Positions 8,990 through 50,759 of a stretch of 64,000 bases of DNA are shown in pieces. A program made the position numbers and the translations under genes. The notes beneath the pieces were generated by a model. That model saw only the letters and a list, made by a program, of their open reading frames with translations. It ran no database searches and was not told the DNA's origin. The stretch lies in contig NIVC01000862.1 in NCBI GenBank assembly GCA_002269645.1, positions 1-64,000 on the forward strand. The letters run 5' to 3'. This DNA is from Macrostomum lignano. Its lineage: Eukaryota. Numbering within the stretch: the stretch's first letter is position 1; the number at the start of each line of letters is the position of its first letter.

Positions 8990-9464
8990 GTGCGCGTGTT
9001 CATTGTATATGTAACTTATTTAATGTTTAGTATCTTTCTTCTGTAGTACAGATCTATGCACTCTAACTTACTACAGTATTGTGCTAGCCCTTATGGTTCC
9101 TACTGAAATTATCTCACCAAGTTGCTGCAGTTCTTTAGTTCTAACTTCTCTATCCTATAAATTGTCACTAATATATCTACTTTGAGTAGCGTTGGCAGCC
9201 CTACTCTATGACTCTTTCCTAGAGATTTCTAATTTCACACGGTTTCCTAGAACCCTTGTAATAGCGTGTAGTGCCCGAGCGGTAAGACACTGTCTAATTC
9301 CCTAATTCAGTTCGAAAGTCTAGCGTTTTCCGAGGATCAAGGGTGTCCAGCAGTAGCCAATCTATTCCCCTAATGCCTAATCCCTCAACACCTAATGTCT
9401 ATTATAAGCCTGTACGGTTTTCTTAGGATCTGTACGATCTCGATCTCCCTACTCCGGTTTCTAT

Positions 9465-10738: not shown

Positions 10739-12609
10739 CTAAACCATAGGCATCTTGGTGACCTGGTGTAAGAATGTGATTTTAGTATAAGGCGGAGCAT
10801 CTATAGAGAGGCGAAGAGCCTTATTTTGCAGAATTTGTAACTTGTTGACAAGGGATGCCAGTAGATTGATGAGCACTGGAGCGCCGTAAGTCATTGTGCT
10901 CTCAATGTAAGATCTATAGATGAGGCGAAGAGCCAGTTGCGAAATCCTGGAGTTCTTAGCCATCCTAGCTAGCGCAGCCATTTTGGCAGTCGAAGACCAA
11001 GCTACCTTGTCGATATGGGCCCTAAAGTTAAGCTGTTTGTCAAGAACCATCCCTAGGAAGGTGACGGAATCATAGTACTTGATTTTGTCTTGTCCAAGTT
11101 TAATTGGAGGATCGTCTGGACCTGTTTTGTTCCCATTAGCTTTGAAAAAGGAAATGGCTTTACTTTTGGAGGGATTGATGACTATGCCCAAATTGTCAAG
11201 CCACTTTTTGAGGACAATGAAGTATGAGTTAAGCCTTTTAGCGGACATAGTGGATTTTCTGGCAGAGGCCCATACTGCTAAGTCGTCAGCGAACTGACTA
11301 AAGCGGACCTTGCTGTCAGTGGGCTTGGGTATAGAGCTAGCGAAGATGATAAAGAGCAGGGGCGAGAGCACCCCACCCTGCGGGACACCCGCCGTTGGCT
11401 GAAAGACCTCGCCCCGGGCTCCTCCAACTATAATTCGTGTCATGTTGTGCGGGATTTTACTTTTCCAGATTTTATATTTAAGGTAGTCCAGCCAGACTCC
11501 ATCAAAGGCTCCTTTGACATCAAAGAAGACCCCCAACGTGTACTGCCTCAACTGAAGCATTTTCAGCACATCGTCGGTGAGTCTTACTATATTGTCATAT
11601 GTGCAGTGATCGAATCTGTAGGCACATTGTTCCTCATTAATAATTCCTAGGTTTTCTAAGATAATTCTAAGGTTTTTAGCTAGAATCTTCTCGTAAAGTT
11701 TACCAACACAGGAGGTTAGGCTGATGGGTCTATAGCTTTCCACGAGATTTTTGGATTTGTTTGGTTTAGGGATCATCTTGATGATGGCCTTTTTCCATTG
11801 TTTAGGGAAGTATCCTATGAGAAAACTAGAGTTGTAAATTTTTGCGAGCACTCTGATGGAGTCCGGGCTGAGACCATATTTCAAAACCATGTTAGGAATT
11901 CTATCCGGACCGGGAGCTCCTCCTGACCTAAGTTTTCTGCTCTCCCAGAGCACGTCCTGGTCAGTAATGTTTAGGATATCGCTTTCGATATCTTCTTTAT
12001 CTGGATCAATCGGGTTCGCGTGCTCTTTATGGTATGAAAGTGCCGCGATTATATTTTTATGGGGTTTGAAGATCTCATGATCTTTGTACTTGCTGACTTT
12101 TTTCGTAGATAAGCGAGTCTTGGTTGGGGTGAGATTGCATTTGATCTTTTAGAAAGTCGCTGAAGAGTGAAGCTTTTTCTGCCTCAGTCTCGGCATGCGA
12201 ATCCTTGTAGACTAGAAGGGGATAGTTGATCATTTTGGACCTTTCTCCTGTCATCTTTTTGATGTCAATCCAAAATTTTTTGGGTTTTTTTTGTAACTAG
12301 TTTTAGCAATTTTGTGGCATAGATCTTCGAATTTCCTATATCTATGCATACGTATGGCATTTCGTATTTCTTTAGCTGCTTGATTGGCTTGAACTCTGAA
12401 GTCGTCTATTCTAGTTTTTTGAATAATTTTCTAATTTTCCTCCTATGCTTAATTTTGTTAATAATATCTGGGGGAAGCTGCTCCCTAGGGTCCCGGTTGG
12501 GTACAACATCCTCAATGGTGTCATGAATGCACTGATTTAGCAGATCAACCGCTTTATCTAGGTCCTCAGGTGTGGAGAATCTACAACTGAGAAGCTGTTG
12601 GTTGCTAAG
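10739..12609 (-). pseudogene. LINE ORF2, reverse transcriptase part (open 10739-11953; several frameshifts in 11953-12500)
   Basis: Motifs GAPGPDRIPNMVLK, WKKAIIKMIPKP, YRPISLTSCVGKLYEKI, FFDVKGAFDGVW, GVPQGGVLSPLLF, SQFADDLAVW, FLGMVLD. No RNase H follows. Confidence 0.92.
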
Positions 12610-12927: not shown

Positions 12928-14854
12928 AGCGGACCCAGCCTTCCAGCACCAGCGCCTTTTCTTCCCGTGAGCGGCCAACCGGCAGTCCTGTGGCCAAGAT
13001 GGCTGGACGCGTTCGAATTCTTCTACACGGCATCCCAGTTTCGGGAGTCGGAGGGGCAATCCGAGGCGGAACCCACAAAGAGGAATCTGCTGCTCCACCT
13101 GCTCGGATTCGAAGGCCAGCGCATTGCCAAGGCGAGACAAGCACTCACGGAGGGAGATTCCTTCAAGGAGGCGAAGGCAAAGCTGGACGGGCGGGATCTT
13201 CGGAGAGAAGCCCAACGTGATGGTGGCTCGCTTCCGATTCCGCCAACGACACCAGCTGCCCGGCGAAGACGCAGAGTCCTTCGTGGCCGCGCTCAGGGAG
13301 CTGGCCGAGCCCTGCGAGTACGGAAATCTCCGAGACCAGCTCATCAGAGACCAACTGGCAGAGAAGACTGGCAGCGCTCGCATCCGAGAGCGACTGCTGA
13401 CGGAAGACGCGGCTACTCTCACGCTGGAGAGGGCCCTCGCCATCGCCGTCACCATCGAGAAGGCGTCAAAGGGCTGTCAGGCTCTGATGGAGACGGAGCC
13501 CGTGCACGCGGTCCGGCAGGCGCAGAAGCCAAAGGCGAAGTGGAGCGGCGCGGCGGAGCCAGCTAAGAAAGGCCAGCAAAGTCGACCCGCCGCCAAGGCC
13601 TGCTCTCGCTGCGGACGCAGTCACGGCGACGGCAACTGCCCAGCGAAGGGGCAGTCCTGCAACAGCTGCGGCAAAATGAACCATTTCAGCCGTTGCTGCC
13701 GGAGCAAGGCGCTCCAAGTGACCGGCCAGGCTCAGGACGGCCCGGACGAGGCGGTCACTATATACGCCGTGCAGGGAGACGGTGAGATCCGTGCGCAGCT
13801 GCGGTTCGGACAAGCAGAGGTGCCGGTCAATACTCTGATCGACTGCGGCGCCAAGGTGTCACTGTTGAACGCCGACACGGCCGCGCTCCTGACCGAGGTG
13901 CTACCTCAGCCGACAACGATGAAGCTGCGCGCATACGGCGGCAAGCTGATCGATCTCGTGGGCCAAGCGGTGGTCCCCGTTAAGCACAACAACCGGTCGC
14001 TGCAACACCTATTCTACATCGCGAAGCACGGCGACAACATCGCAGGCCGAGACCTCATGGATAAGCTCGGTTTCCATGTGAGCCTCTCCGAGGACGTCAG
14101 CGAGGTGAACAGCGTCGTGGAGCAGCTGGAGAGGCAGTTTCCAGCGGCCCTTAGCGAGCAGATCGGCTGCTGCAGCGGAGCCGTGCACAAGCCCGTCATC
14201 GAGCAGCAGCTGGTGGAGGCCGAGCTCGACAAACTGGAAGTGGCTGGCAGCATTCGAGCGGCCAAGGAGGACTGCACGCCGCTGTCCGACGCCATCACCC
14301 AGTTCCTGGAGGTCTACCGGAGCACGCCGCACAGCCTGACGGGCAGGAGCCCCGCCGAGCTCATGCTAGGGCGATCGATGCGGACGATGCTGACTGCCCT
14401 GGCGCCGCCCAAAGACATCAATGAGACGGACGAAGGATGGCGACTGCGCGAGACCATCTACGACCGGCAACAGCGGACCAAGCGCTACACGGACCTACGC
14501 CGCCGGGCGCGAGTCAGCGACCTCCGACCAGGCGATTGGGTCCGAGTGCGGCGGCCCATCAAGAAGGGCAAGCTGGCCACGAGACTGTCCGGCCCGCTAC
14601 AGATCATGACCAAGGCCGGCGCCGCGTACCGGCTGAGCGACGGCACGACCTGGAATCAACAGGCGTTGGTCCCCACAAGCGCTAGGGCCTACGGCGACCA
14701 GGACGCCGAGCTCGACCCGCTGGTGCATGGCGAACTCTGCGGTGACAGCGATGCGGCGGCGACGGCGCAGCCGGCGGGGCTTCCCGGCGCAGTCCGACCA
14801 AGGCGCTCGGCCAGGGCCCGACGACCTCCGGAGCGGTACCAAGCGGGACTGTGA
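12925..14854 (+). CDS. Gag-protease fused in frame to the integrase C-terminus (one frameshift near 13190; RT, RNase H and IN core deleted)
   Basis: Gag WPRWLDAFEFF...RFRFRQRHQLPGED; zinc knuckles CSRCGRSHGDGNC and CNSCGKMNHFSRCC; protease LIDCGAKVSLL; then YRSTPHSLTGRSPAELMLGR and PGDWVRVR...SGPLQI. Confidence 0.85.
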
Positions 14855-15183
14855 TGTCCGTGCTCTCGGGAGGGGGGAAAATGTTGTGTCGTGACTAGGA
14901 GCCCGTAAAAGGGCCGTTCGTCTAACTAACCTTTTCTTACTTTTTCTTACTACTCTACTTTAAGTAGTGCAGTTAATAAATTATTCGTATATTGTATTGT
15001 GAAACGTATTTTTAATCACGTGACATTTTGGCGGTTAAATTTATCGATCGTGTAACAATTTACTGTTAAATATCAAATATAAGCGCGGGTTGCCCTAAGT
15101 GGAGCTCATACCTTTTTCCCGGCAAAAAAGTCTTACCTGCCACGTACTCGTGTTTTCCTGTGTTAGTCTGTTGAGACACCACA

Positions 15184-15962
15184 CTAAGTTTATCCTGAAG
15201 GGTCCCTCTAAAGGTTTCCCAGTCAGTGTTCCAAAAGCTTTTAGAGGGTTTTTCGCTCAACTTACAGTTAGGATCTAAATAAATTTTAATGATAATGGGA
15301 AGGTGGTCGCTATCTAGATCTTCTCCCACAATAACATTGCTGGTATGTTTAATAAGCTCCGGGGAACAAATTCCTAAATCAAGCACGTTCCTAAGGACTG
15401 AGCCGCTACGGTAGCTAACTCTGGTACAGTTCTCATAATCGTTAAGTATGGTTGGTGGGTTTGGATGAGAATCAAGCCAATCAAACAGCTGCTTGCCTGG
15501 ATAGTTGAATTGGGAGTCACCCCCAAGGGCTGGGTGGTTGCAGTTAAAGTCCCCGATAACTAAGGTCGAGGGTTTAGAGAATAGATGGTCAAGAAGTTGG
15601 GTGTTAAGCCGTGTTGGGGTTGGGTTCCTGTAGAAGAGGACCACATTAAGCTGTTTAAGTTTGTTATTTTTAAGATGAACTTCAAAACTGATAAGTTCGT
15701 GGTTGCAGTTGTCGAAAATTTTTTCAACATTCATAATTTCTAAATGATTTTTATAGACAACTGCAAGTCCTCTTCTACAGTTGGGAACATCAAGCCGGAG
15801 TGTGGCATAATCAGGTAAGTAGAATATATTGTTTTCCTTTAGGCAGGTTTCAGAGAACATTCCTATGTCTAGGTCTTGCTTGCTGACCCAGGAAGAAATC
15901 TCATAAAATTTGTTGCTTAATCCATTGCAATTAAGGTGCCCTATGTTTAGTGAATCCCGCAC
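15184..15962 (-). pseudogene. LINE ORF2, apurinic-type endonuclease domain
   Basis: LNIGHLNCNGL, MFSETCL, LVIGDFNCNH, LDLGICS and DSDHLPI are APE motifs. Removing the gypsy and one CTAAG gives the continuous reading QDKLS-NQQLLSC. Confidence 0.93.
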
Positions 15963-16058: not shown

Positions 16059-16629
16059 TCAGGTTCCACCTCCGCTCGCTTGCGCGGCTTCGGTGTCTCC
16101 TGCCCCAGAAACAGGCCTCCCTCGACCCCTGAGCGCCGCCAGAACTTCAGTTACCGCCTGGATAGCGAGTTGCCCCGCTTCCCATTCGGTAAGCATCTGT
16201 CCCGGGTTGGCACCCATGAGTCGGGTGAGGGCCCGAAGTACCACCTCGAGCACCCCCATCCGGGAGATCAGGCCCCTCTCACTTGAATGATTGGCAGATG
16301 GGGCGGCGTCAGCTTCTTGATTGGGTGCAGACTGAGAGGCAGATTCAGGCACGGCTGCAGTCAGCGAAGACAGATTGGCTGAGAACGTTGAGGTCTCCTG
16401 GTTGGCCGGAGGATTGGTCAACGCTTGCGGGGCGGCAGCGGCAGCGGCGGCAGCTCGGTTCGAGTAGGCAATCGGTCCGAGGGTTGGCTTGCTAAGTCCA
16501 GGTCGCGCCGAATCGGCGTAGGAGAGGGGACCTGGGACGCCAAATGCCTCCCCCAGGGACTGACTACCAAATATGTCTTGAGTTAATTTGTTTGTGTTTT
16601 GTGCTCTGATTTTAGCGTGTGCTTTTTTA
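16059..16629 (-). pseudogene. LINE ORF1, C-terminal part (downstream of the CMC insertion)
   Basis: Removing 16630-25649 restores KEANEIAI-KKAHAKIRAQNTN in frame. Confidence 0.85.
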
Positions 16630-17000
16630 CCCGCCTGGATAAGTGGTCCGGCAGTTTGTCCGTATACACGTCCGGGTGTCATCCGGGGTTGTAATGTATT
16701 TTTCCCATTTGATTCGTCCGGAAAAAACCGGAGGAAAAGTTTAAAATCGGACCAAAATGTCTGGAAAAAAACCGATTGGTCCGGTTGAAATCCGGACTGT
16801 CATCCGAAAACTTGTCCGGAAGTTCATCCAGAATTAACCGGACCACATGGCGGGTTATTTTCCGGACAAAACCGGACGACTGCATCAGACGAGTAAACCG
16901 GATGACTACCCGGATCAAAAAGCGGACGAAAACCGGGCAAAGAGAGATTCACGTGATCCGGACGAAAATCCGGGAGAACATCCGGATGGAAAGCGGAAGT
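16630..17000. repeat. Subterminal TCCGG/CCGGA motif array (mirror array at about 25300-25647)
   Basis: Many tccgg/ccgga motifs in both orientations next to each TIR, as expected for CACTA-type subterminal repeats. Confidence 0.8.
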
Positions 17001-17199
17001 ACATACTTAGTACACTGATGAAAGTCACGCTGACTTTAATTCATGGCAAGGCCTTTAAATGCAGACGCGAAATCCAACGAGATTTGTGTTGAAATGTTTT
17101 AAATAAAAAAGAAGCTTTACAAAGACATATTCACGACTGGTTTCCAGTAACATTTTTTGTTTCCAAGTGGCACAGCTGAAGCTGCTTGTACGAAACTGG

Positions 17200-17659
17200 A
17201 GGTGAAAGGTTTTTTCCTAGAAGTCGATATAATGATTTCTTCAAACTTTTTACTCGAGCCACAGTCGTGTCCGAGATGGACGAATTTGGACGGCCTTCAC
17301 GTTCATCATCGTCCAGCTCCAGACAGCCGGAGCGGAATCGACCGAACCACTTGTACACCATCGTCTGGGATGGGGCTTCACTCTCAAGGGCCTTTTGAAG
17401 CGTCTGCAAGCATTCGGAGGCAGACAGGCCAAGCCGGAATTGGACCAGAATTGCGACTCGCCTGTCGCGCTCAGTCAGGCGCAGCACTGGAGCGGGGGTT
17501 TCATCACTTCTTCGGCCACTGCGTCGCAACATTTTGGCCAAACTGGCTGAAAATTTGTGTGAAAGGTGCCAATATCCTAAGGAAAAAGTTCATAAAATTT
17601 CGTTTGATTCGCTTGAAGATAAGTTTGGTTTTCCGCGAACTTATTAAGCAGCCCTCGTA
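17200..17659 (-). mobile_element. Truncated mariner element (5' TIR + Mos1-type HTH) nested in the CMC element
   Basis: The minus strand starts TA-CGAGGGCTGCTTAATAAGTT (mariner-type end). The protein RVAILVQFRLGLSASECLQTLQKALESEAPSQTMVYKWFGRFRSGCLELDDDEREGRP matches the mariner N-terminus. No DDD domain or second TIR is seen. Confidence 0.8.
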
Positions 17660-18076
17660 GTTATGCTGCACGAACACCCACAGCAGGGGCTTAAACCGGC
17701 AAGAACACTTTGTATTTTACGAACATTCATCATCATCACATCATCGACTCGACACATCTCACAAAATGCTAATATAGTAGGTGCAAAAAGTCACACTGAC
17801 CACAATCACCTCTCAAATCACGAAATACAAAAAGTTGGTGCATAAAGTCACACTGGCCACAATCCCCTTACCCCAATCCTCAAAGGGCCAGAACCACCCT
17901 GCTCCAATATTCTCAAATGGCCAGAACCACCCTGCTCCAATATCCTCAAATGGCCACAATCCCTTTCCCCCAGTCCTCTCTCCGTCTATCTCGAGATCTG
18001 TCCATGTCTGTGATCTGTCCCCGTCAGTCAGCTCTATTGATCACCAGCAATTCACGACCCTGTTCGTCCCTGATCA

Positions 18077-20000
18077 TCAATCGTTCAGCATCTCCAGCAA
18101 CAAGTCACTTGGACGACTGTCGCCGTCCACGTCGCCTGCGCTGAGAAACTGCGTCCCAGTGTTATGAGACTCCTCAGTCTGTTCGGTAATTATGCGCAGA
18201 ACATGTTCTGCAGAGGTGGTAGCCTTCGAGCGAGATGACTGGCCAGGTGTGCGGGCCGCAGTCGAACGCTTGGGTCGGCTGCGCTTCGGCAGTCCCAGCT
18301 GCAATCTCGCCGTCTCGCCGCACCGAGTGAATGCGCGATGCAGTTCGTTGCGGTAAATTGGCACCTCGGCGTTCTGCAGCCACTGCCTCGCGACAGCAAC
18401 TTTGGCCGGGTTCGCCGGCGCCGAAACGTACCCAGCAATTCTTCGGCCTGACAGGGATGAGTTCGCCAATTCTTGCGACGTAAAGACAGCCCTAAAGACA
18501 GCACGCAGTAGCGCCAAGCGCGTAAAGCGCCGCATGGCAACTGCGTCTAGGTCGACCGCCTGCTGATCTTCCATCGCCTTCTTATATTCTTTGTGTCGGT
18601 CTTCAAGTTCAGACCGGAGTCGCAAAGGTACAGAAAAAAACTTCTGGCTGTCGGAAAGGGCGACCAGTCCGCCGGTAGCAGAGCTAGTGGCGGTCCCTTG
18701 CTCCGCGTCACATGCGCGGATTAACGCGCGCGTTTCGGCAACAGACAGGTTGCGATCAGCGGAGAAGGTTGCCTGGTCGCCAAATGCGTCATCGTCAGCA
18801 GACTCGTCCGCGGAGGAGTGCGCGCTAGAAACAGCGTCACCAAAGGTATCATCGGGGCGCACATGTGATGCAGCTGCAGCAGCACCTGAAGTGGTTGCAC
18901 TTGCGGCCGGCAAAAGGCAATTTGATGCCCTGGCGAGCAGCGCGTTGGCGGTGTCGACATTACGCAGTAGGCAATTGTTGCGCGCTTCGGCCTGCTCGAC
19001 CTGCATGACCAGCTTCCGCTCCATTTTGGCCTGCACACTCGTCTTGTGCAGGAGCGTGCGGTTCTGTGCCAGCAGGTTGGTCTCAGAAGTACGGAGGAGC
19101 TTAAGTTCGCCACCTGCGTATGTATTTGAATTGGAAGGATTGACAGGTGAATCAGCTAACTTATGGTTTGCTTCTGCTTATATATGTGGACGGAATGCGT
19201 CAGTTGATGAATCTAGATGCATGCAGAATACGACAATGCAGATCGATCTGATGACCCCATGAGTAACTTAATCAGAAACTTACGCAGGGATTCGGTCAAG
19301 GCCTTCTCCCTTTGGAGCTCAAGCACGAGACCGCGACAGGAGCTGCAGGACCGCGGCAGCTCGGCGGGTGCCGCGTGGACGTTAGTCAAGCTGGCAGCAC
19401 CAGCAGCCTCCCTTTTCTTGTCGAATGGGCCCTTTATTAGTGTGCCCAGATAGCGCCGGGCCGTGCTACGCTTGCTCCGAGCTGTCACGACAGCGACTAC
19501 GGCGCCGGTGTTTAGAGGCAGCTGCACATCCGACCGATGCGAAATGATGGCACTGGTGGACATCAGGCTGGAGTCTGTTGACACTACCTCTGTTCGCTGG
19601 TGGAAGTCGGTATACTGAAATACAAAAAACCGGGCCTTGGCTTCGGCTTTAAACGGCACCATTTCAGGTTCGTTATCTTCTTCAGCGGCGAGTCGATTCC
19701 GCGGAATCGGAACTTCTTCCGAATGAGCAGTGCTATCGATGGCAGTCGGATTAGCGACGCTTAATCCACCTGGCGGATTTAAATCCGCATCTGCCACAGC
19801 TGCGGCGGCGGCGGCGGCGGCGGCTCCAGTCGGGACGTTGGCACCCGAATCGGTTGCCGTAGCCCGAGCCGACACCTTGGCGACACTGAATGGTACTCCT
19901 ATTTTCTTAGAAACACCAGACGGCTTCTTTATTGTTGCATGCGTTTTTTTGCCTCTTTACGTCTTTCTTTCTCCGAAGCGTCGCGACACGTGCGGCCCAT
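18077..20000 (-). CDS. CMC accessory gene: coiled-coil + BEN-domain protein (intron 19114-19283; start uncertain, probably ATG 20000 with a 1-nt slip in an A7 run near 19945)
   Basis: Donor CTGC|GTAAGT and acceptor TACGCAG|GT join TESL-R-GELKLL in frame. BEN-like segment LLRAVFRAVFTSQELANSSLSG...ANPAKVAVARQWL at about 18302-18535. A CxxC (CSSC) precedes the coiled coil. Confidence 0.7.
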
Positions 20001-20225
20001 GATGGCAGTTCTCGTGCACGCTGGAAAAGATATGACATGAGGTTTGCATTTCCGCGAGATCTGTACAGGAGTCATCGTCTCTGATCCTCGAGCACTATAG
20101 GTGACTGAGTACTTGGTTATGTACAACGGGTTCGTAAGGAGTTAGCAGCGGGACGGAATGAAATAACAAACAAGACTGACGGATATCACAAAGCCAAAAA
20201 AGCGCCGGTCCTTTTATATGTGTTT

Positions 20226-20325
20226 GCACTACAGCAACCTCGACACCATTGCACTTCAGCAACCTCGACACCATTGCACTTCAGCAACCTCGACACCATT
20301 GCACTTCAGCAACCTCGACACCATT
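20226..20325. repeat. 4 x 25-bp tandem repeat
   Basis: gcacttcagcaacctcgacaccatt x4 (first copy has one mismatch). Confidence 0.95.
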
Positions 20326-20582
20326 CAACTAAAAAGTTTAAACTAAAACTAAATACTAAAAATTCAACTAAAACAGAAATCGTCAACACAAGTAGAAAAA
20401 GTGTGGAAGGATGAAACAGCATATGAACAAGAGTTGCGCAGCAGTTCTTCTAATATAAAAAACGATTTCACCTGTCCCCACATGTGGGGAAATATTTCTA
20501 TCCCTATCCCTATGATATCCCTATCCCCATCCCTATTTCAACTAGTCCCCATGGCGCGACCATGGTGGGGAACCAAAGCAAT

Positions 20583-21353
20583 TCAATCCTTCTTTGCAGA
20601 CTTAGGTTTCGGCGCATCATAGGGAGCAAGGCCGCGAAGGGGCCGCATACGGCGCCTGCCTACTCTCATCAGCTCCACCGGAAGTGGTGGCGGACTGGGG
20701 GGCATGTCGATGGAAAAAAAGTTTGGCGCCTGGATAATCGGACGATGCCGATGGCGCCCATGGCGCTGCAGGCGCTGGTTGCGAACTTCGGCGGGCAGGT
20801 TGGCGTACCAGGCTTCACAGTCTGGGCAAGTTTGCGCAGGAAGGCGCTGCCTGTCATACCGCCGGCGTGAGTCGAACGTCGGCGGCGGCTCGTCCGGAAG
20901 CCTATTGTAGTCAGCAGCGTACTGCTTGCGTACTTGCGTACTTGCGTCAACTTGCGTACTGCTAGCGACTGGCGTCGGACGGCGGAGCTCTGAGGGCGAC
21001 AGGACTAATTCCTGGATCTCCTCCTGCGCAACTGCATCTTCGGACTCCACGGCTTGTGGAGACGAGTCCCAGGCCTGACTGTCCAACTGCTGGACATGGG
21101 CGACCGGTGAGCCTAGAGTAGTATGTGTGTCGTCCGACTCGACATCCGAATCTACCTGGGCGGCGGGTGAGCCTAGAGTAGTATGTGTGTCGTCCGACTC
21201 GACCTCCGAATCTACGGAATCTCCTAGTAGCTCATCAACCCCTTCGCCGATAAGTCCGTCCAAAATCAAGGACCAGTCTGGAGTCCCGGATAATTGACCC
21301 GTGCGCCGGGACATGTAGCTGCAGTGTAAGGCGGTGGAACCCTTTGTACTCAT
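20583..21353 (-). CDS. CMC accessory gene: 256-aa protein with a CtIP/Sae2-like C-terminal domain
   Basis: Intact ATG-to-stop ORF with an acidic S/T-Q-containing N-terminus. aa 163-220 RRRYDRQRLPAQTCPDCEAWYANLPAEVRNQRLQRHGRHRHRPIIQAPNFFSIDMP align without long gaps to the recalled human CtIP segment [58 protein letters not shown]. Confidence 0.8.
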   Translation of the reverse strand: MSTKGSTALHCSYMSRRTGQLSGTPDWSLILDGLIGEGVDELLGDSVDSEVESDDTHTTLGSPAAQVDSDVESDDTHTTLGSPVAHVQQLDSQAWDSSPQAVESEDAVAQEEIQELVLSPSELRRPTPVASSTQVDASTQVRKQYAADYNRLPDEPPPTFDSRRRYDRQRLPAQTCPDCEAWYANLPAEVRNQRLQRHGRHRHRPIIQAPNFFSIDMPPSPPPLPVELMRVGRRRMRPLRGLAPYDAPKPKSAKKD

Positions 21354-21990
21354 ACGTGCTAAGCAATTACTTGAACAACCGTTTGCAACCCGTTAGTGCA
21401 TGTACAAGAGGGCTGCAGAAAAGAGGAAAAACGTATACATAGTTACAGTGCAGCGGCAAATACAACTGTATTTCTAATTAATCAGTTATACACATACGTA
21501 TACGTAAGTAAACCAAACATTCAGTAATATGGAAACCGGTAAGGTATGAAATAGTACTGCAACATTCGTGCAGACGTATCAATAATAATTTAAGTGATTA
21601 TGAAATTATACTGCCTCATGTGTAATGTTTGCGAAACGAAATATTTATTATGATAATGAGATAATTAGTAGAACAATTTCAGTGCAGCTGACGTCTTCAA
21701 TTATATACTCGAGTATTGGGGGATCACAAGCTGAGAGGAAACAAATTCCAAATTTGCCTCTAAATTAGCTAAAGAGTTGAGAGCGCGACACAAGAATCAT
21801 CGATGAAACAAAATCGTCCGACATGCAAAAAAAGCGACAGTCGCCACAATATTATAAAGGGAATTATGTGCTTGAAATGAAAATTTTACACTACTTTCAT
21901 GGACCGCTATTTTCAATTCCATTGATATTATACTTATACTATTGAGGCGGTGATGATTAAACAGAAGCAACAGCTAATTAATACTGGAAG

Positions 21991-24815
21991 CTACTGGAAG
22001 CCGATCTGCGGGTGTGGCATAACGCATATTTTTGTGTCCGAAACGACGCACGACCCAACGATGGCAGTGGCGTGAACTCGAACGGTGCGCTCATGTGGTA
22101 ACGGACCGAATGGATTGACTAAGAGGCCTCGGATGTGCGCAAATCTGGCACCTCGGTTCTCCGAGTTGGCATGTACGGCACACAAGGCCTCCAGTGGGTC
22201 CACGACAGCGTCCTGTACGGGTAGGATGTGAAGGTTGACATACACCTCATCGTTGTCGCACTCGATTGCTAGAACGCGGCCGAACTGAAAGCTCGTCGGC
22301 TGGCATCCGGCAATGGCTACAAAGGCAGATGACGCCCGCGTCTCAATCTCCGGTAGATACTCCTCGAAATACAACCCTGACGGGAGAGACGCCGAACGCC
22401 AGCCGTGGGCCATGTTGTTAGGACGCCGTAGTAGAATGCCAGACGCCGCGCGCATGCATGTCGTTCTGTGCCGCGCGCGTGGCTGCTGGTCGTTGTCGCG
22501 GAGAAGCTCCTCAGCCTGCATGACTGCCAGCTCGCGCTCAACGGCTCCGACAATCTCCACATCCGTGCGGCGGGACCCGTGAATCTGGCGACGCAGTCTG
22601 GTATGCATCGATTCAAACAGCCCGGCGGATTGACGGTTCAGAGGACCTGCCAGTATGGCATACGGCAGCATGTGGCAGCAGACTTGATGGGCGTTGTATG
22701 ACAGAAATCGCAGCGAATAAAGGCGCGACAAGTTCGCGTGAAAGTGTCTCAGCCCGATTTCAACGTGGCGCAATTCTGCACGCGGCGCACCTTCTAAGGA
22801 CATCCAGAAGATGCACGTGGAGAGGATTAAAATGTGCCAGTAGTGTTCCTCTGGCAGGAAGTCATCAAGGACGAAAGGCGCGAACGCCAATAACCACATT
22901 GCGTATTCGTGGCCGCGCATGTGTCTGATGTCCTTGAGAAGCCTGACAGTGTGACGCTGAACAGTGCGAGGAACGCGAATGCGCCGAAGACGCTGGTCGA
23001 TGTGGCTCAGCCGCGCGTGCAGGTCCGGACAATTTGTGGCGCCTCGATCCGGTTTTTCATGACGCACGAGGAACAGCTGGTACAAAATATTGCGTACCAG
23101 GCCGGAGCACAACTGGTGCAGGAAACACGGTGGACAGCCGCGGACAAAGTCAAACCCGTGCAGTCGAGACAGCGGTGACAGGCCACGGACACCGAGGACG
23201 TCAGTCCGAATGTCGCCACCCTGCTGTGCGTGCTGCTCAGCGAGAGTGTGAGTGTCGCTGGTCGACCGCACTACAGTCTGAACGCATCCTAGACGTCTGG
23301 CCTGATTAAGCATCGCGTCAGTAACCCCGACGCCGTAGACTCGTCCATGGCCTGATGGATGCAATGATGTCCGGATGTAGCACTTCTCGCATCCGTAGAT
23401 AGCCGAGAAACGCTTCATGCACAGAGCGTCCGCTCTCGCTGGAGCGTCGAACAGCGCCATTAGCGGATGCAGATGCAATCGACGCTGAACCCCGAGGCTG
23501 TCGATATACTGTACACCATCGAAGCGCAGAGTATTCAGTGCATTTACGACGATTGGCAGAAAGGCGGCGGCATGGACCTTTTTCTTGCCGGCCCACACGC
23601 CACACTTCATCACGAATCGGAGCTTCAGCCGCTCGTGCACTTCGTTAATACTCAGATAGACGGGGCACACCTCGACATTGCTAGTGCAGAAAAGAGTAAA
23701 TCCGTCTGCACAGATGGTGTATGTAAGGTCGCTCCGAGTCTCGGGTTCGATGTTCTCGAGAAACGACTTGTACAGTTCGCTGTTGGCAAAGTGCAGCTTC
23801 TCTTCGTCCAGTGCAAGCCGTTCAATCGGAAATGTTACGCTCTGTAGAAGACCGCGAGATTCAACGAATGTTCGGATCTGCGCAGGTATGTCGAATAACC
23901 AGAAGTTGGCCACATTTTCCGACGTACAGTGCGCACAATTAGAGTTTCCTGGATCGCAGCGCTGCTCGGAATGTAGATAACAGTCGTTGCAGACAGTGTA
24001 ACATGTTGACGACCCCGAGATTGTTCCCCTCTTCTTCAAAGTTTCACGCAATGTTCGTCCGTGCTGAGGAAGGCGGTTGTCGGGTACTAGCCTGTGCAGT
24101 AGTGAAAGCAGCCTTGTCGTCCCGCTAACTGTCAGGTTCAGTTCCCTCGCGCAGGAGCTGACCTCCCAAATCGCCTCTCCGAGCGAAACGGGCAGAGCGT
24201 CGTGCCAATTGACTCCTGGAAACCCCGGGACGTCCTCGTCGTTGTCGGAGTCTGTGCTCTGGCCGTCAACAGACTGCGAACCTGGGAGGAATATATTGTG
24301 TGTGGTGAGCGTAGTGCGCATGTGTTCGGTGGACAGTGTGAGTGCAACGTGCAGGTAACACAAAAGTATCAAACATGAGCCATTGGGATGGATCCACAAT
24401 CCACGATAAGCCAACTCTCTGACTGGGACTCACCACTAGAGGAAGAATCCCCGTCCGAAGTGCTGTCAGAGCTCGACACCGGGTCCCCATTGCGGCCATC
24501 GGCCTGTGCGCCACCGTCGTCGGACTCTGGATTGTCTATAGGCAGGTATACAGACTGCTCATCTCGAGATCGAGATACTGTAGATGTAGAGGCGGATCCG
24601 CTTGCAGCTGCGACGACTGCAGCAGTCCCACTGGTGCCTGCGCCGCCGGACTGGACTTCGCCGGAGTCGACATCTGCAGAAGTTCCTGCGGTTGGACGCA
24701 GAGGTGATCGCGAACCTTCTTGTCGACTATTTGAATTGGCCAACGCACGCTGCCGCATGTACTCTCGCATGTACTGCCTCCGCTGTAACCGCGGCGGTAA
24801 ATCTGAATTGTCCAT
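21991..24815 (-). CDS. CMC/EnSpm DDE transposase, two exons (24815-24434, 24281-21991), about 890 aa
   Basis: A phase-1 intron (AGTG|GTGAGT ... CTCCCAG|GT) fuses the 148-aa and 807-aa track ORFs. Transposase_21-like motifs ICADGFTLF, CPVYLSINE, FDAPARADALCMK and YGCEKC, then CFLHQLCSG, GHEYAMWLL and YNAHQVCCH. Confidence 0.9.
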
Positions 24816-25649
24816 GCAGTTTGCGAGTCGTGCAGTACTGAAAGAGATTGGGTTGGTTTATGATGTCTAGATGCGCATATTCACTGTAGCACTATCTGCT
24901 GTGTGACCTATTCATCTATCCACGTATAGAATGGACGACATGTTTCTGAATTTCTGCATTTCAGTAACAACTCGGACGAGACCAATTTTGTCCAACAATA
25001 CCCGCTGTTTCCAAGACCTCTATGATCCCTATCTAACATAGTGTACTATCTAATGTGTTGCACACATGCAAAAGATGCGAAGGCATCGAACAACATCGAA
25101 GTCTCCCATCAAAATCAGAACGTGGGAAATGTCATACGGAGAAGTATATTTTTCTGTAGAACTTGGAGCATAAGAAATAGAACACGTTGTGCTGCTGTTT
25201 CTGGAACATGTGTTACAAACTGTGGGCATACAAGTAGGAGAAAGGTGCCATTTTCCACTATTCAATTCCACGTGCTCCACTATCACCCGGAAACATATCC
25301 GCTCTTCGTCCGGTTGTTAGGCGGGCGACAGCCCGGATTAAAATGCGGATGACTTTTCGGACGACAGTGACAATTCATCCGGCTAGTCATCCGTAAAGTC
25401 ATCCGACGCTTCATCCGGTTTTTGTCCGGGTAAACAAGCGGATATAATTCCGGACTAAAATGGACCAATTAAGTAAAAAAATCACCACTTTGTCCGGCTC
25501 TGATCCGGAAACTGGCCCGCTACTTTGTCCGGCAGCTTAAACCGGATGAATACCGGACGAAAAGCTGCATTTGTCCGGAATCGACCACCAAACGCGGACC
25601 AATGCGGACGACGGCCGGACGACAACCGGATCGGCTATCCAGGCGGGTA

Positions 25650-27717
25650 ATGGCAATTTCGTTCGCTTCTTTTACTTTACTACATCTATATAAGTAAGCT
25701 GGGTGTTCTTCGCCGCAGTTTGCGCATTTAAATTTGCTTTCTTTCGGGCAGTCTGCAGAATAGTGATCTCCCGCACATTTGTTACACCTGTAGGTTGCTG
25801 TGCATCTGTTTTCATGATGCCCTAATCTCTGACATTTTTTACATTGGATTGCTTTTACCGGAGCTAAATTAATAGACTCTTCGCATTTAAATTTGCTGTA
25901 ACCAAGGTAGACTCCATGCTGGATGCATCTTTCCATCGTGCCCTTGCTCTTAGTGAAGAGGCGGATGTGCGGAGTAGGTGCACCAGTTGCCCTAGAGACA
26001 ATGCGCACAGCGCCGTCAATTGGTAGTTGCTGCTCTGAGTCTGCCAAGTGTTTGGCTAGCATGTGTGCGTCTACGGTGATTGGCACATGTTTTACGATAA
26101 ACGAGTACGTTGTTGGTGATTTTAGTGGAGCACGCGCCTGATCATCTCCTTGTCTTATTGGCCTTTTGGCTGCTGTGCGTCGCGTGACTTCGTGGTTATT
26201 AATTTTATTTATTTTGAGAATAGCTGTTAATAGTGTGTTGAAGTCCTTAGGGTGATCTGGAATCGCGATGTAGCCGGAGCTATGGTATAGGTCCTTAACC
26301 GACCTGATGCGAACGTCTGGGAAATTTGTTTTCAGAAACCATTCGAATTTGATGGGATCTTTGCCTTCTTGGTCGATTTCAAAGATGACAGGTGCTGAGT
26401 TAGTAGATTTTTGAGTATTATTAGTTTTAGGATGGTAGTTTAGAGTTGTAGAGTTTAGTTGGCTAGATTGGTTAGATTGGTGAATGTTAGGTTGCTGAGT
26501 AGCTGGCAGCTTGTAGTTGTTAGGTGGTTGAGTTTGGTCGCCTGATTGCTGAGTGTCTGAAAGTGTCTGCTGATTGTTTGCATGTGGTTGCAGAGTTGCT
26601 GAGTGCTTCGGCAGAGTGCTAGACTGAGTGGCTGACTGTAGTGTACCTGATGGCTGATTTGACAGAGTGTGCCTGCTGAGTGTTTGTTGAATGTTGCTGA
26701 GAGCCTGATTGAGTGTGTTGTTTGGTGCTAGACTGAGTGGCTGACTGCTGAGAGCCAGTGAGCTGGTTAGCTGTTTGAGATTGCTGAGTGCTTGATTTGT
26801 GCCCCGAAGTGCAGCTGTTCGAACGTGATCTGATCTTTTTCAGATTTTCGGCTTCTTGCTCTGCTCTGCGACGAACCGAATTTTCGTCGTCCAGATCGCA
26901 GGTGATATCGTTGTCAAGAGGCTGCACGCAAGGGTTTGCAAGAGCAGAAGCAGGAGCAGGATCAGGTGGGATTCTGCTATCATACGTTAGCCTGAATGTT
27001 AGATTTACTCTTGCCTCTTTGACTTTTAGGTCCTTAAGGACGGCGTGCTGGAAGTGTGCCTGTGTCGCACCCCCCATTACCAGCAGAGAACCACTGGCGA
27101 GTTTTTGGGACCAAGCGATGTTGGTGGAGCCTTTGGTTCGTAAGTGGAAGTCACGTGCGGCACCAATAGAGATAGAGGCTATGGTCGGATTAGCCCCTAG
27201 TTCGTCTTCATCGTCTGAGTGCCAAGGAATGTGCACGGACCCATCTTTGTAATAATTTACGAGGCATGAGTTGAAGACGGGTAGACCAAACTCAGCGCTC
27301 AGCCAAGTAGCAAGACTAGTAACCAACGGGTGCCAGTCGTCATTGGCCGGAATCTTAGTTCCCCCGTAGCTATATTCTGGCCTGAACCATACAATTTTGC
27401 GGGCTTCAGGACGGCCTTTTGTGAGATGGTGAAAGGCTTTTGGCCTGGATTTCGTCGGTTAGTATTTTGAGTATTTGATTTTCCGAGCTCTTAAGAGCAA
27501 CCGGGTAGTAGCAGATGTTGCTGTTGTTTGGCAATGTGACAGTTTTCTCATCAGTCTTGTCAGCTATTGGAATTCGTATTATAGTTGTTTTACCATGTTC
27601 TTTTCTAACCTCTAAACTGTCCCTTTTAGGGGGAGGCAAAGGCTCAGCCCGCTCACCTTTGGACGTGCCGGTTTGCGGAGGCGTCTCGGGCAGCGGCGCG
27701 TTTGATGGAGACAGCAT
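25650..27717 (-). pseudogene. LINE ORF1, N-terminal part: AlkB dioxygenase - Q/S/T linker - gag-like region with three CCHC knuckles (two 1-nt frameshifts near 27435 and 26660)
   Basis: AlkB: RKIVWF..EYSYGG, FNSCLVNYYKDG, WHSDDE (HxD), FQHAV (H), RVNLTFR (R..R). Knuckles: CKKCQRLGHHENRC, CNKCAGDHYSADC, CANCGEEHPAYLYRC. Confidence 0.88.
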
Positions 27718-42454: not shown

Positions 42455-42505
<51 letters not shown>

Positions 42506-42645
42506 TGACTGACTGACTGACTGACTGACTGACTGACTGACTGACTGACTGACTGACTGACTGACTGACTTGACTGACTGACTGTCTGACTGACCTGAGT
42601 GAGTGGGTGACTGATTGACTGACTGACTGACTTGAGTGAGTGGGT

Positions 42646-42696
<51 letters not shown>

Positions 42697-42826
42697 TGAC
42701 TGACTGACTGACTGACTGACTGACTGACTGACTGACTGACTGACTGACTGACTGACTGACTGACTGACTGACTGAGTGACTGACTGAGTGACTGACTGAC
42801 TGACTGACTGACTTGAGTGAGTGGGT

Positions 42827-42877
<51 letters not shown>

Positions 42878-43195
42878 TGACTGACTGACTGACTGACTGA
42901 CTGACTGACTGACTGACTGACTGAGTGACTGACTGAGTGACTGACTGACTGACTGACTGACTGACTGACTGACTGACTGACTGACTGACTGACTGACTGA
43001 CTGACTGACTGACTGACTGACTGACTGACTGACTGACTGACTGACTGACTGACTGACTGACTGACTGACTGACTGACTGACTGACTGACTGACTGACTGA
43101 CTGACTGACTGACTGACTGACTGACTGACTGACTGACTGACTGACTGACTGACTGACTGACTGACTGACTGACTGACTGACTGACTGACTGACTG

Positions 43196-43270
<75 letters not shown>

Positions 43271-50757: not shown

Positions 50758-50759
50758 AC

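What the first reader, a model, noticed from the sequence alone, without database searches (positions are those of the whole stretch)
16630..25647. Candidate new system: a 9-kb CMC/EnSpm transposon carrying its own CtIP/Sae2-like and BEN-domain genes
Seen: perfect TIRs, TA TSD, subterminal arrays and three co-oriented genes (spliced transposase, CtIP-like ORF, spliced BEN gene), all essentially intact. Established: CtIP/Sae2 activates the MRE11-RAD50-NBS1 nuclease on blocked or hairpin-capped ends; the related Transib/RAG and hAT transposases leave hairpins on donor flanks; BEN domains bind DNA and organise chromatin. Inference: a cut-and-paste element that encodes a module to steer host repair of its excision break, plus a DNA-binding partner analogous to CACTA TnpA. 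I know of no description of a CtIP-like gene in such elements, but could not search the literature.
Basis: partly seen in the sequence, partly recalled or inferred. Interest (0 to 1): 0.92.

Follow-up and report, generated by a model that had tools for sequence, protein, structure and literature searches.

The report
DNA transposon carrying a CtIP-like gene
A complete 9-kb cut-and-paste transposon, probably in a flatworm genome, carries an intact gene copied from the tail of the host DNA-break-repair factor CtIP, but its only known relative lacks that gene, so it is an acquired cargo whose usefulness to the transposon is unproven.

Summary
The anatomy is real. The element spans 16630-25647. 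It has 12-bp perfect ends (CCCGCCTGGATA), a TA duplication, phased CCGGA arrays at both ends and three intact genes on the minus strand. Deleting it plus one TA restores a 586-codon LINE ORF1 frame, so all 9 kb moved as one unit.

The middle ORF (20583-21353) is a true homologue of the CtIP/Sae2 C-terminal domain. Evidence: phmmer E=1e-25 to a Macrostomum lignano host gene; E~4e-4 to vertebrate CtIP among 1.8 billion proteins; hhalign 98.7%. It keeps the CxxC and RHR motifs, but it falls below Pfam's SAE2 cut-off and lacks CtIP's N-terminal domain and the T847 site.

Two labels were not reproduced. The transposase has no Pfam hit (no Transposase_21) and its ends are CCC..GGG; it fits the CACTA/Mirage/Chapaev/Transib (CMCT) clade only by motifs read by eye. 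The BEN assignment is inconclusive.

The only sister element found, a marine metagenome contig with 47%-identical transposase, keeps the transposase and the third gene with the same intron, but has no CtIP gene. CtIP is therefore lineage-specific cargo, not a core module. Function versus passive capture is undecided and needs other genomic copies. I found no published precedent.

The parts
16630..25647 (-). Whole transposon (9018 bp), genes on the minus strand
   Evidence: TIRs. Removing it plus one TA restores a 586-aa LINE ORF1 frame.
16628..16629 (.). TA target-site duplication, left copy. The wider context T-TA..TA-A implies a TTAA-like target.
25648..25649 (.). TA target-site duplication, right copy
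16630..16641 (+). Terminal inverted repeat CCCGCCTGGATA (the 3' end relative to the genes)
25636..25647 (-). Terminal inverted repeat CCCGCCTGGATA (the 5' end relative to the genes)
16642..17000 (.). Subterminal array of CCGGA(Y)(G)A motifs in both orientations, spaced mostly at about 11-12 bp or multiples. Presumed protein-binding sites.
   Evidence: The same motif forms arrays in sister element L001.
25290..25635 (.). Subterminal array of the same motif at the other end
24434..24815 (-). Transposase exon 1 (ATG at 24815, donor G|GTGAGT). A strong 3' splice acceptor ends 22 nt before the ATG.
21991..24281 (-). Transposase exon 2, including the stop. Candidate catalytic and zinc motifs in the 890-aa protein: D320 (ICADGF), D406 (FDAPARA), C425-x2-C428, C513-x2-H516, H581-x3-H585-E586.
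   Evidence: 47% identity to P0001.
21413..21430 (-). Pyrimidine tract plus CAG (3' splice acceptor) 59 nt before the CtIP-like start codon
20583..21353 (-). CtIP-like ORF, 256 aa. It has its own ATG and an acidic N-terminal half with an in-frame 60-bp duplication (21097-21215).
   Evidence: It is the only frame without internal stops across this interval; the other five have 5-11 stops.
20616..20939 (-). CtIP/Sae2 C-terminal homology region (aa 139-246): C176-x2-C179, R200-H201-R202, NFF 211-213. A209 stands at the position of human T847 and S220-P at that of T859.
20224..20325 (.). 25-bp x 4 tandem repeat in the spacer upstream of gene 3. Role unknown.
19961..20000 (-). Tentative first mini-exon of gene 3 (ATG at 20000; an acceptor ends 20 nt upstream)
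   Evidence: In-frame model only; not verified.
19284..19898 (-). Gene 3 exon encoding the conserved N-terminal domain and a CxxC (donor C|GTAAGT, the same as in L001)
18077..19113 (-). Gene 3 last exon: a coiled coil plus a conserved C-terminal helical domain with the motif FTSQELANSSLSGRR (only weakly BEN-like)
17131..17660 (-). Nested fragment of a mariner-type element (TIR-like end plus HTH_48 domain) between the gene 3 stop and the left array. A secondary insertion, not part of the system.

Best explanation
Shown:
- This is a complete, apparently autonomous cut-and-paste DNA transposon inserted into a LINE ORF1.
- Its family is defined by CCCGC...GCGGG ends and phased CCGGA subterminal arrays.
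- The family has two conserved genes: a DDE-type transposase, and a 540-aa coiled-coil protein with a conserved C-terminal helical domain.

Inferred:
- The transposase belongs to the CACTA/Mirage/Chapaev/Transib (CMCT) clade. This rests on motifs alone (D...D, C-x2-C, C-x2-H, H-x3-H-E).
- The coiled-coil protein is the factor that binds the subterminal arrays, as TnpA does in En/Spm.

The CtIP-like ORF:
- It is a third cistron specific to this lineage. It derives from the C-terminal MRN-activating (Sae2) domain of a host CtIP/RBBP8 gene of macrostomid-flatworm type.
- It has been rebuilt as a stand-alone gene with its own ATG and a splice acceptor just upstream, like the two core genes.

Most likely mode of action (inferred, not shown): the protein engages MRE11-RAD50 at the breaks that transposition creates, meaning the gapped donor site and/or the transposase-capped ends of the excised element. 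It lacks the oligomerisation domain and the T847-type switch. It therefore acts as a free-standing C-terminal module that either triggers MRN clipping locally or competes with host CtIP. In either case the effect would be to bias repair in the element's favour.
For: Element and boundaries.

Family and core genes: sister element L001 has the same end sequence (CCCGC), the same CCGGA arrays, a 47%-identical transposase, and gene 3 with the identical intron position.

CtIP homology:
- phmmer gives E=1.2e-25 to M. lignano PAA54340.1 and 4.2e-10 to P0004. P0004 itself passes Pfam SAE2 at 37.6 bits.
- phmmer gives E=3.5e-4 and 6.2e-4 to vertebrate CtIP in a library of 1.84e9 proteins.
- hhalign gives 98.7% probability, E=2e-16. 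BLASTP gives 2e-12.
- All seven family-invariant residues are kept.

The source is a host gene: the M. lignano homologue lies in conserved synteny (acetyl-CoA synthetase - CtIP-like - EMP24) on two contigs, with no transposase nearby.

Hints of constraint:
- Against that gene, codon positions 1 and 2 are 60-64% identical but position 3 only 32%, with pS=0.79, which is saturated.
- The ORF has accumulated no more unique changes than the host gene relative to five outgroup CtIPs.
- It is the only frame without internal stops across this interval.

Integration into the element's expression plan: all 5 start codons (3 here, 2 in L001) lie 4-59 nt after a strong 3' splice acceptor. The background is 0.8 such sites per kb, so about 0.055 per gene by chance. 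M. lignano uses spliced-leader trans-splicing and operons (PMC8629364).

Mechanistic plausibility:
- Phosphorylated Sae2/CtIP stimulates the Mre11 endonuclease on hairpin-capped or protein-blocked ends through a Rad50-Sae2 interaction (PMC11662671).
- In yeast, no Ac/Ds excision revertants were recovered without Mre11 or Sae2 (PMC3299998).
Against: - The only sister element lacks the gene, so transposition in this family does not need it.
- Only one copy carrying it is known. Copy number, expression and selection among copies are untested.
- Intactness, motif retention and rate parity would all follow trivially from a recent capture of the window species' own CtIP exon.
- The ORF is below Pfam's SAE2 cut-off.
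- The T847-equivalent residue is Ala. The N-terminal tetramerisation domain is absent: the ORF aligns only to CtIP C-termini and no N-terminal domain is detected.
- Hairpin formation by this transposase is not known.
- Superfamily placement rests on motifs read by eye. There is no Pfam or PDB hit and the structure models failed.
Confidence: 0.45

Rival explanations
1. Passive transduplication. The CtIP segment is a host gene fragment picked up by this one transposon lineage, as CACTA and Mutator elements often do. It is carried as a passenger with no benefit to the element, and it looks intact only because the capture is recent.
For: - It is absent from the sister element L001, whose spacer is about 1 kb against about 2 kb here. 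The difference is close to the size of one CtIP cistron.
- Only the last ~110-150 residues of a host gene are represented.
- No other transposon-borne CtIP turned up in any search.
- The copy is old enough to have acquired a nested mariner fragment, so it need not be an active, optimised element.
Against: - The ORF extends about 100-140 codons upstream of the homology with no stop and has its own ATG. An in-frame TAA lies between the acceptor and the ATG, so it is not simply a captured exon read through from its intron.
- It is sense-oriented and has the same acceptor-plus-short-leader layout as the core genes.
- Synonymous sites are saturated against the closest known host gene while protein motifs are kept.
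- There is no excess of unique substitutions.
- None of these points excludes a recent capture from an unsampled host gene.
Confidence: 0.4
2. Decoy or inhibitor. The stand-alone CtIP C-terminus blocks host MRN-CtIP. This would protect the transposase-bound ends of the excised element, which resemble the protein-blocked ends that MRN-CtIP clips, or suppress resection at the donor break. This is a sub-case of the functional reading and is scored separately from the activator version.
For: - The protein lacks the N-terminal domain, and Ala stands at the T847-equivalent position. In CtIP/Sae2 this CDK-phosphorylated residue is needed to stimulate MRN: the yeast equivalent sae2-S267A is deficient in MRX endonuclease activation (PMC11662671; alignment).
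- Mobile elements that disarm Mre11-Rad50 have precedent: phage N15 TelN (PMC12624138, listed).
Against: - The M. lignano host gene also has Ala at that position. Its loss is therefore a lineage trait, not a decoy signature.
- S220-P remains at the T859-equivalent position.
- There are no binding or activity data.
Confidence: 0.2
3. The ORF is not a separate gene. It is either part of another nested mobile element or a chance open frame.
For: It falls below the Pfam gathering threshold. The first word-indexed search found no homologues.
Against: - There are no TIR, TSD or direct-repeat boundaries around it.
- Homology to CtIP is highly significant by three methods.
- It is the only frame without internal stops across this interval.
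- The whole 9 kb excises cleanly in silico as one unit.
Confidence: 0.03

Closest known systems
CtIP/RBBP8 - Sae2 - Ctp1 (C-terminal 'SAE2' domain, Pfam PF08573), the cofactor of the MRE11-RAD50-NBS1 endonuclease
   Same: - A homologous C-terminal domain with the CxxC and RHR motifs and an NF(W/F) motif.
- The same order and spacing of these motifs.
- Closest to a Macrostomum lignano host CtIP-like gene (48-55% aa identity).
   Different: - Only the C-terminal ~110-150 residues are related.
- There is no N-terminal coiled-coil or tetramerisation domain.
- Ala stands at the T847 CDK site.
- It scores below Pfam's cut-off.
- It is encoded inside a transposon, not at a host locus.
CMC/CMCT DNA transposons (En/Spm-CACTA, Mirage, Chapaev, Transib and the fungal ESTA lineage with TA duplications)
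   Same: - Large cut-and-paste element with short TIRs, a 2-bp TSD within the 2-5 bp range, and long subterminal arrays of a short motif.
- Two co-oriented genes, a transposase and a second protein, as with En/Spm TnpD and TnpA.
- The transposase shows D...D, then C-x2-C and H-x3-H before an E, which is the motif set that defines CMCT (PMC12730594).
   Different: - The ends are CCCGC..GCGGG, not CA..TG, CAC or CACTA.
- There is no Pfam Transposase_21 hit at any threshold.
- The catalytic E is unverified.
- No solved or predicted structure was available to confirm the fold.
Helitron-encoded RPA-like proteins and fungal transposons encoding TET/JBP dioxygenases (host DNA-metabolism genes captured and retained by transposons)
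   Same: A host DNA-transaction protein domain sits as an extra gene inside an autonomous DNA transposon, and only some lineages of the family have it.
   Different: Those captures are conserved across many families and copies. Here only a single copy is known, and the captured function, a double-strand-break resection cofactor, has not been reported in a transposon.
Pack-MULE / CACTA transduplication of host gene fragments
   Same: A fragment of a host gene (the last-exon region) lies between the ends of a DNA transposon and is absent from a related element.
   Different: - The carrier is autonomous.
- The fragment is a complete functional domain in the sense orientation, with its own start codon and an upstream acceptor.
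- It shows no decay.
Phage Mu Gam (a Ku homologue). This comparison is from my own knowledge and was not tested here.
   Same: A transposing element encodes a homologue of a host double-strand-break-end factor that acts on DNA ends during its own life cycle.
   Different: A different protein family, a different domain of life, and a demonstrated function.

Membership tests
CtIP/Sae2 C-terminal domain (PF08573) | Score at or above Pfam's gathering cut-off (19.8 bits) | tested here: not met
   15.0 bits for the whole ORF and 17.3 bits for the C-terminal 136 aa. The M. lignano host homologue also fails, at 13-14 bits.
CtIP/Sae2 C-terminal domain (PF08573) | Statistically significant similarity to bona fide CtIP proteins | tested here: met
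   phmmer against 1.84e9 proteins gives 1.2e-25, 4.2e-10 (P0004, which passes Pfam SAE2 at 37.6 bits) and 3.5e-4 / 6.2e-4 (vertebrate CtIP). hhalign gives 98.7%, E=2e-16. BLASTP gives 2e-12.
CtIP/Sae2 C-terminal domain (PF08573) | CxxC and RHR motifs in the conserved order | tested here: met
   C176-P-D-C179 and R200-H201-R202. The columns invariant across 7 sequences are R, R, L, C, C, H, R.
CtIP/Sae2 (full-length cofactor) | CDK phospho-site equivalent to human T847 / yeast S267 | tested here: not met
   Ala209 in 'QAPNFF'. The M. lignano host gene has the same. S220-P is present at the T859-equivalent position.
CtIP/Sae2 (full-length cofactor) | N-terminal coiled-coil / tetramerisation domain | tested here: not met
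   The ORF's N-terminal 138 aa are acidic repeats with no domain hit, and homology is confined to aa 99-246, matching only CtIP C-termini. P0004 and P0009 do have N-terminal coiled coils.
CMC/CMCT transposon clade (EnSpm-Mirage-Chapaev-Transib) | Transposase recognised by the Transposase_21 profile (PF02992) or by similarity to a classified member | tested here: not met
   No Pfam hit at E<=10 for the window protein or P0001. The profile finds nothing in the PDB, which I expected (not checked here) to hold RAG1/Transib chains. The only homologues are unclassified.
CMC/CMCT transposon clade | [quoted passage not shown] | tested here: inconclusive
   D320, D406, C425-x2-C428 and H581-x3-H585-E586 are present. 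They are conserved in P0001, and the first three also in P0002. They were assigned by eye, and the catalytic roles are unverified.
CMC/CMCT transposon clade | Termini 5'-CA..TG-3' (CAC/CACTA) | tested here: not met
   The ends are CCCGCC...GGCGGG here and CCCGCTG...CAGCGGG in L001.
CMC/CMCT transposon clade | Short TSD of 2-5 bp | tested here: met
   A 2-bp TA duplication. Frame restoration works only with a 2-bp duplication. No TSD is visible at the ends of the L001 metagenome contig.
BEN domain (PF10523) | Profile or sequence similarity to known BEN domains | tested here: inconclusive
   No Pfam hit at E<=10. No PDB hit with the two-sequence profile. hhalign against BEND6/Insv/BANP sequences taken from the PDB gives 5.8% probability and a pairwise E of 0.0066 over 26 columns, centred on the hallmark '..LF..eELA..SLsGk' motif. 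The AF2 model was too poor to use (pLDDT 45).
Passive transduplicate (Pack-type capture) | Host-derived fragment that is absent from related elements and evolves neutrally | tested here: inconclusive
   Absence from L001 is met. Neutral evolution is not indicated, but it cannot be tested without other copies or the same-genome host gene.

The most novel reading that the evidence does not exclude
The CtIP-C cistron is a transposon-adapted regulator of MRE11-RAD50. It would be the first mobile-element-encoded homologue of a eukaryotic end-resection cofactor. Selection would maintain it because it either recruits MRN to process the ends the transposase makes (hairpins or protein-capped ends, favouring copy-restoring homologous repair) or shields the excised transpososome from MRN-CtIP clipping. 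The carrier would also represent an undescribed CMCT-like lineage with CCC..GGG ends whose genes are matured one by one at splice acceptors, perhaps by spliced-leader trans-splicing of a polycistronic transcript.
Probability: 0.3. Interest if true: 0.85.

Novelty: new variant of a known kind. Interest (0 to 1): 0.6.

Why it matters
Cut-and-paste transposons depend on host double-strand-break repair, yet they are generally thought to leave the choice of repair pathway to the host. A transposon that carries its own copy of the MRN-activating domain of CtIP would be direct evidence that elements manipulate the resection step.

It would also provide a naturally minimised CtIP C-terminal module: about 110 conserved residues with no oligomerisation domain. 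That module could be used to dissect how CtIP switches on MRE11-RAD50.

The element looks intact and probably comes from a macrostomid flatworm. Macrostomum lignano is, to my knowledge (not checked here), a laboratory model in which transgenesis has been established, so the element could be tested directly and might serve as a vector.

If the gene proves to be a passive capture, the finding reduces to a new, uncatalogued family of DNA transposons with an unusual passenger.

Tried and rejected
- The word-indexed homologue search with the whole CtIP ORF found nothing. This was a false negative: exhaustive phmmer found six homologues.
- A search with a CtIP C-terminal alignment returned mostly vertebrate (largely fish) CtIP C-terminal fragments and no transposon-borne copy.
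- Three collection scans found no relatives: JGI metagenomes with the transposase alignment, JGI metagenomes with the CtIP alignment, and viral contigs with the transposase alignment.
- An exact-product look-up of the window ORF gave no record. P0002 also has no record.
- AlphaFold2 models were unusable: gene 3's last exon had pLDDT 45 and the transposase had pLDDT 35 with a 3-sequence alignment. I therefore ran no fold searches.
- PDB profile searches for the transposase and the BEN-like domain returned 0 hits at E<=10.
- Pairwise dN/dS against the M. lignano gene cannot be computed because synonymous sites are saturated.
- A piggyBac-like TTAA duplication was considered and rejected. The flanks are TTTA and TAAT, and only a 2-bp duplication restores the LINE frame.
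- A fusion of transposase exon 1 to the CtIP ORF through the 21413 acceptor was rejected by my own reading of the sequence. It is out of frame and meets a stop, and an in-frame TAA also lies between the acceptor and the ATG.
- A nested-element origin for the CtIP segment was rejected because it has no boundaries.
- Rfam and tRNA scans of the window were empty.
- Yuan & Wessler 2011 could not be retrieved. The CMCT signature is cited from PMC12730594 instead.

Full report

Yes, as anatomy.
- The sequence CCCGCCTGGATA lies at 16630-16641 and, inverted, at 25636-25647. At up to one mismatch the window holds 3 matches against 0.22 expected, and no shuffle out of 100 reaches 3.
- Both ends are flanked by TA, in the wider context T-TA|element|TA-A.
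- An independent test of the boundaries came from the flanks. They belong to a minus-strand LINE. Deleting 16630-25647 plus exactly one TA fuses them into a 586-codon stop-free frame that runs through a CCHC-knuckle ORF1. Leaving both TAs, or removing 3 or 4 bases of the flanking duplication instead of 2, gives only 401-412 codons.
- The 9018 bp therefore arrived as one insertion with a 2-bp duplication.
- Both subterminal regions are packed with TCCGG/CCGGA: 22 in 371 bp and 17 in 358 bp, against 0.43 per 200 bp in the window. The extended core is CCGGA(Y)(G)A, and spacings are mostly about 11-12 bp or multiples.

**2. Genes**

All three genes are on the minus strand and intact.
- *Transposase.* It is spliced: exon 1 is 24815-24434 with donor GTGAGT, and exon 2 is 24281-21991, giving 890 aa. 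The junction aligns without a gap to an unspliced homologue.
- *CtIP-like ORF.* It spans 21353-20583 (256 aa) and is the only frame without internal stops across that interval.
- *Third gene.* It is split at 19284/19113 and probably has a 40-nt first exon starting at ATG 20000.
- *GC content.* GC3 is 0.60-0.64 in all three genes, while the spacers are 35-44% GC.
- *Nested fragment.* A mariner fragment (HTH_48, E=3e-9) lies at about 17131-17660, between the gene 3 stop and the left array. This copy is therefore not brand new, but no gene is damaged.

**3. A sister element defines the core**

The transposase has only two detectable relatives among 5.8 billion proteins.
- P0001 (47% identity) lies on a 10.2-kb marine-metagenome (Tara) contig, L001. 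L001 is a complete element of the same family:
  - Its ends are CCCGCTGAAAAAATCGTCCGG, inverted.
  - It has CCGGA arrays at both ends.
  - It has the transposase and then the third gene, with its intron at the identical position (C|GTAAGT).
- L001 has no CtIP-like sequence, by tblastn at E<=10 and by an unfiltered profile search of all six frames (best E=5.7).
- Its spacer between the transposase and gene 3 is about 1 kb against about 2 kb here. The difference is roughly one CtIP cistron.
- The family core is therefore two genes, and the CtIP gene is an addition in the window's lineage.
- Scans of JGI metagenomes and viral contigs gave no further members. The window's own genome is not in the searchable collections.

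**4. Is the ORF really CtIP-like?**

Yes.
- Pfam SAE2 scores only 15-17 bits against a cut-off of 19.8.
- Exhaustive phmmer against 1.84 billion representatives gives four informative hits:
  - E=1.2e-25 to Macrostomum lignano PAA54340.1.
  - E=4.2e-10 to P0004, which has an N-terminal coiled coil and passes Pfam SAE2 at 37.6 bits.
  - E=3.5e-4 and 6.2e-4 to vertebrate CtIP.
- A profile of the window ORF plus the M. lignano protein matches a profile of eight bona fide CtIP C-termini at 98.7% probability, E=2e-16.
- BLASTP to a fish CtIP gives 2e-12 over the block RRKxxRxxL..C..CE.YYA.LP.E....L...RHR......NF.
- The seven columns invariant across the family are all kept, including C176-x2-C179 and H201-R202.
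- Three features differ from a canonical CtIP:
  - Nothing resembles the N-terminal oligomerisation domain.
  - The residue aligned with human T847 is Ala209.
  - The T859 position is S220-P.
- The M. lignano protein shares the Ala, so that is a lineage trait.

**5. Where did it come from?**

- The M. lignano homologue is an ordinary multi-exon host gene. It lies between an acetyl-CoA synthetase and an EMP24 gene on two homeologous contigs, with no transposase or gene 3 homologue nearby.
- The window probably comes from a related flatworm. A ~165-bp interspersed repeat at 47548-47714 matches four places in those 46 kb of M. lignano at 75-82% identity. The CtIP ORF's best hit is also M. lignano, as is one of the transposase's two hits (P0002, 35% identity).
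- The ORF is therefore best read as derived from the last-exon region of a macrostomid-type host CtIP.
- Against the M. lignano exon it is 48% identical in protein over 152 codons. Codon positions 1 and 2 are 60-64% identical and position 3 only 32% (pS=0.79, saturated).
- Relative to five outgroup CtIPs it has no more unique substitutions than the host gene: 14 v 10, 5 v 10, 4 v 9, 7 v 5 and 5 v 5.
- There is thus no sign of decay. The same pattern would follow if the capture were recent and came from the window species' own gene, which has not been sampled.

**6. Is it wired into the element?**

- Each of the five start codons in the two elements lies 4-59 nt downstream of a strong 3' splice acceptor, defined as at least 9 of 11 pyrimidines followed by CAG.
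- Such sites occur 0.8 times per kb. That gives about 0.055 per gene by chance and about 5e-7 for all five.
- The CtIP ORF shares this layout: the acceptor ends at 21413 and the ATG is at 21353.
- An in-frame TAA at 21395-21393 separates them. The ORF must therefore start at its own ATG and is not simply a captured exon read through from its intron.
- The layout fits either 5'-UTR introns or spliced-leader processing of a long transcript. M. lignano has spliced-leader trans-splicing and operons (PMC8629364).
- No repeat or TIR boundaries mark the segment as a separate nested element.

**7. The two contested labels**

*Transposase.*
- There is no Pfam hit at E<=10 for it or for P0001, no PDB hit, and the AF2 model was unusable (pLDDT 35).
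- By eye it has D320 (DGF), D406 (FDAPARA), C425-x2-C428, C513-x2-H516 and H581-x3-H585-E586.
- The 2-bp duplication lies within that clade's 2-5 bp range. The ends are CCC..GGG rather than CA..TG or CAC.
- I call it CMCT-like and unclassified.

*Gene 3.*
- There is no Pfam BEN hit and no PDB hit.
- I retrieved real BEN sequences (BEND6, Insv, BANP) from the PDB using a consensus written from memory. hhalign then aligns only 26 columns around FTSQELANSSLSGRR at 5.8% probability, with a pairwise E of 0.0066.
- The register is the expected one, but the result is inconclusive.
- Its conservation across the family, its coiled coil, and the phased arrays make it the natural candidate for the end-binding factor, as TnpA is in En/Spm. 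This is inference.

**8. Mechanism**

*Shown:* an intact transposon that moved as a unit and contains an intact, homologous CtIP C-terminal domain gene.

*Established elsewhere:*
- Phosphorylated Sae2/CtIP activates the MRE11 endonuclease on hairpin-capped or protein-blocked ends through a Rad50-Sae2 interaction (PMC11662671).
- In yeast, no Ac/Ds excision revertants were recovered when Mre11 or Sae2 was deleted (PMC3299998).

*Inferred:*
- The protein meets MRN at the breaks made by transposition.
- As a monomeric C-terminal module without the T847 switch, it could be a local activator. That would open or clean the ends and favour resection and homologous repair from the sister chromatid, which restores the donor copy.
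- Alternatively it could be a competitor that keeps MRN-CtIP off the transposase-capped ends of the excised element.
- I put about 0.45-0.5 on 'retained because useful', about 0.4 on 'passive capture', and I cannot rank activator against decoy.

**9. Novelty and verdict**

- Three full-text searches returned nothing relevant. Combinations of CtIP-like, Sae2-like, PF08573 and transposase gave no paper at all.
- Host DNA-metabolism genes inside transposons are known in kind, for example TET/JBP in fungal elements (PMC12730594) and, from my own knowledge, RPA in Helitrons. A resection cofactor is new as cargo, and the carrier family seems uncatalogued. That makes it a new variant of a known kind.
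It overreached on the family labels and on treating the three-gene layout as a system, because the single available sister contradicts that.
- Interest is 0.6. It is well worth a copy census and an MRN assay, but it rests on one locus.

Noticed in passing
window 25650-26838 and 16059-16627 (minus strand), with 15066-15962 and 10739-11953 downstream: The transposon sits inside a minus-strand non-LTR retrotransposon. Its gag-like ORF1 (three CCHC knuckles) is restored in silico. The APE endonuclease (Exo_endo_phos_2) and RT (RVT_1) ORFs follow further downstream.
   Followed up: partly
window 26619-27326 (-): An AlkB-type 2OG-Fe(II) oxygenase ORF (PF13532, E=6e-29) lies immediately upstream of the start of the LINE ORF1 frame, on the same strand and overlapping it. 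It may be a host exon, or an AlkB domain belonging to the retrotransposon, which would be unusual.
   Followed up: partly
window 17131-17660 (-): A 5' fragment of a mariner-type element (TIR-like end plus the HTH_48 domain of the transposase) is nested in the 3' untranslated part of the transposon.
   Followed up: partly
window 47548-47714: A ~165-bp interspersed repeat matches four sites in two Macrostomum lignano contigs (L002, L003) at 75-82% identity. This is the best clue to the window's taxonomic origin.
   Followed up: partly
window 8492-9046 (+): An ORF with a replication protein A OB-fold (REPA_OB_2, E=9e-14). It could be a host RPA exon or a Helitron-type captured RPA.
   Followed up: no
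window 39701-40775, 42354-43290, 45006-45658, 50499-50758: Large tandem arrays: 27-bp x 40 (read as an ORF it gives the repeat KPKPEQLSI), (CTGA) x 232, 23-bp x 27, and 41-bp x 6. The strong strand composition skew at 54-56 kb was not examined.
   Followed up: no
window 60363-63314 (+) and 13124-14854 (+): A Ty3/gypsy-type pol ORF (RT, RNase H, integrase; 983 aa) and a separate gag/integrase-like ORF. The window is largely a mosaic of mobile elements.
   Followed up: no
L001 800-3900 and L001 ends (~97 and ~10043): The marine sister element has about 3 kb of AT-rich non-coding DNA between its left array and the transposase, where the window element has about 0.5 kb. No target-site duplication is visible at its ends (flanks AT and CC), possibly because the metagenome assembly collapsed several copies.
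   Followed up: no
P0002 (Macrostomum lignano, UniRef 'Guanylate cyclase domain-containing protein'): A 1018-aa annotated M. lignano protein contains the N-terminal half of a transposase of this family (35% identity). This is probably a gene-model fusion with a transposon fragment, and it shows that related elements exist in that genome.
   Followed up: no
window 20224-20325 and 17876-17956: Two tandem repeats inside the element: 25-bp x 4 just upstream of gene 3, and 33-bp x 2.5 downstream of it. Their role is unknown.
   Followed up: no
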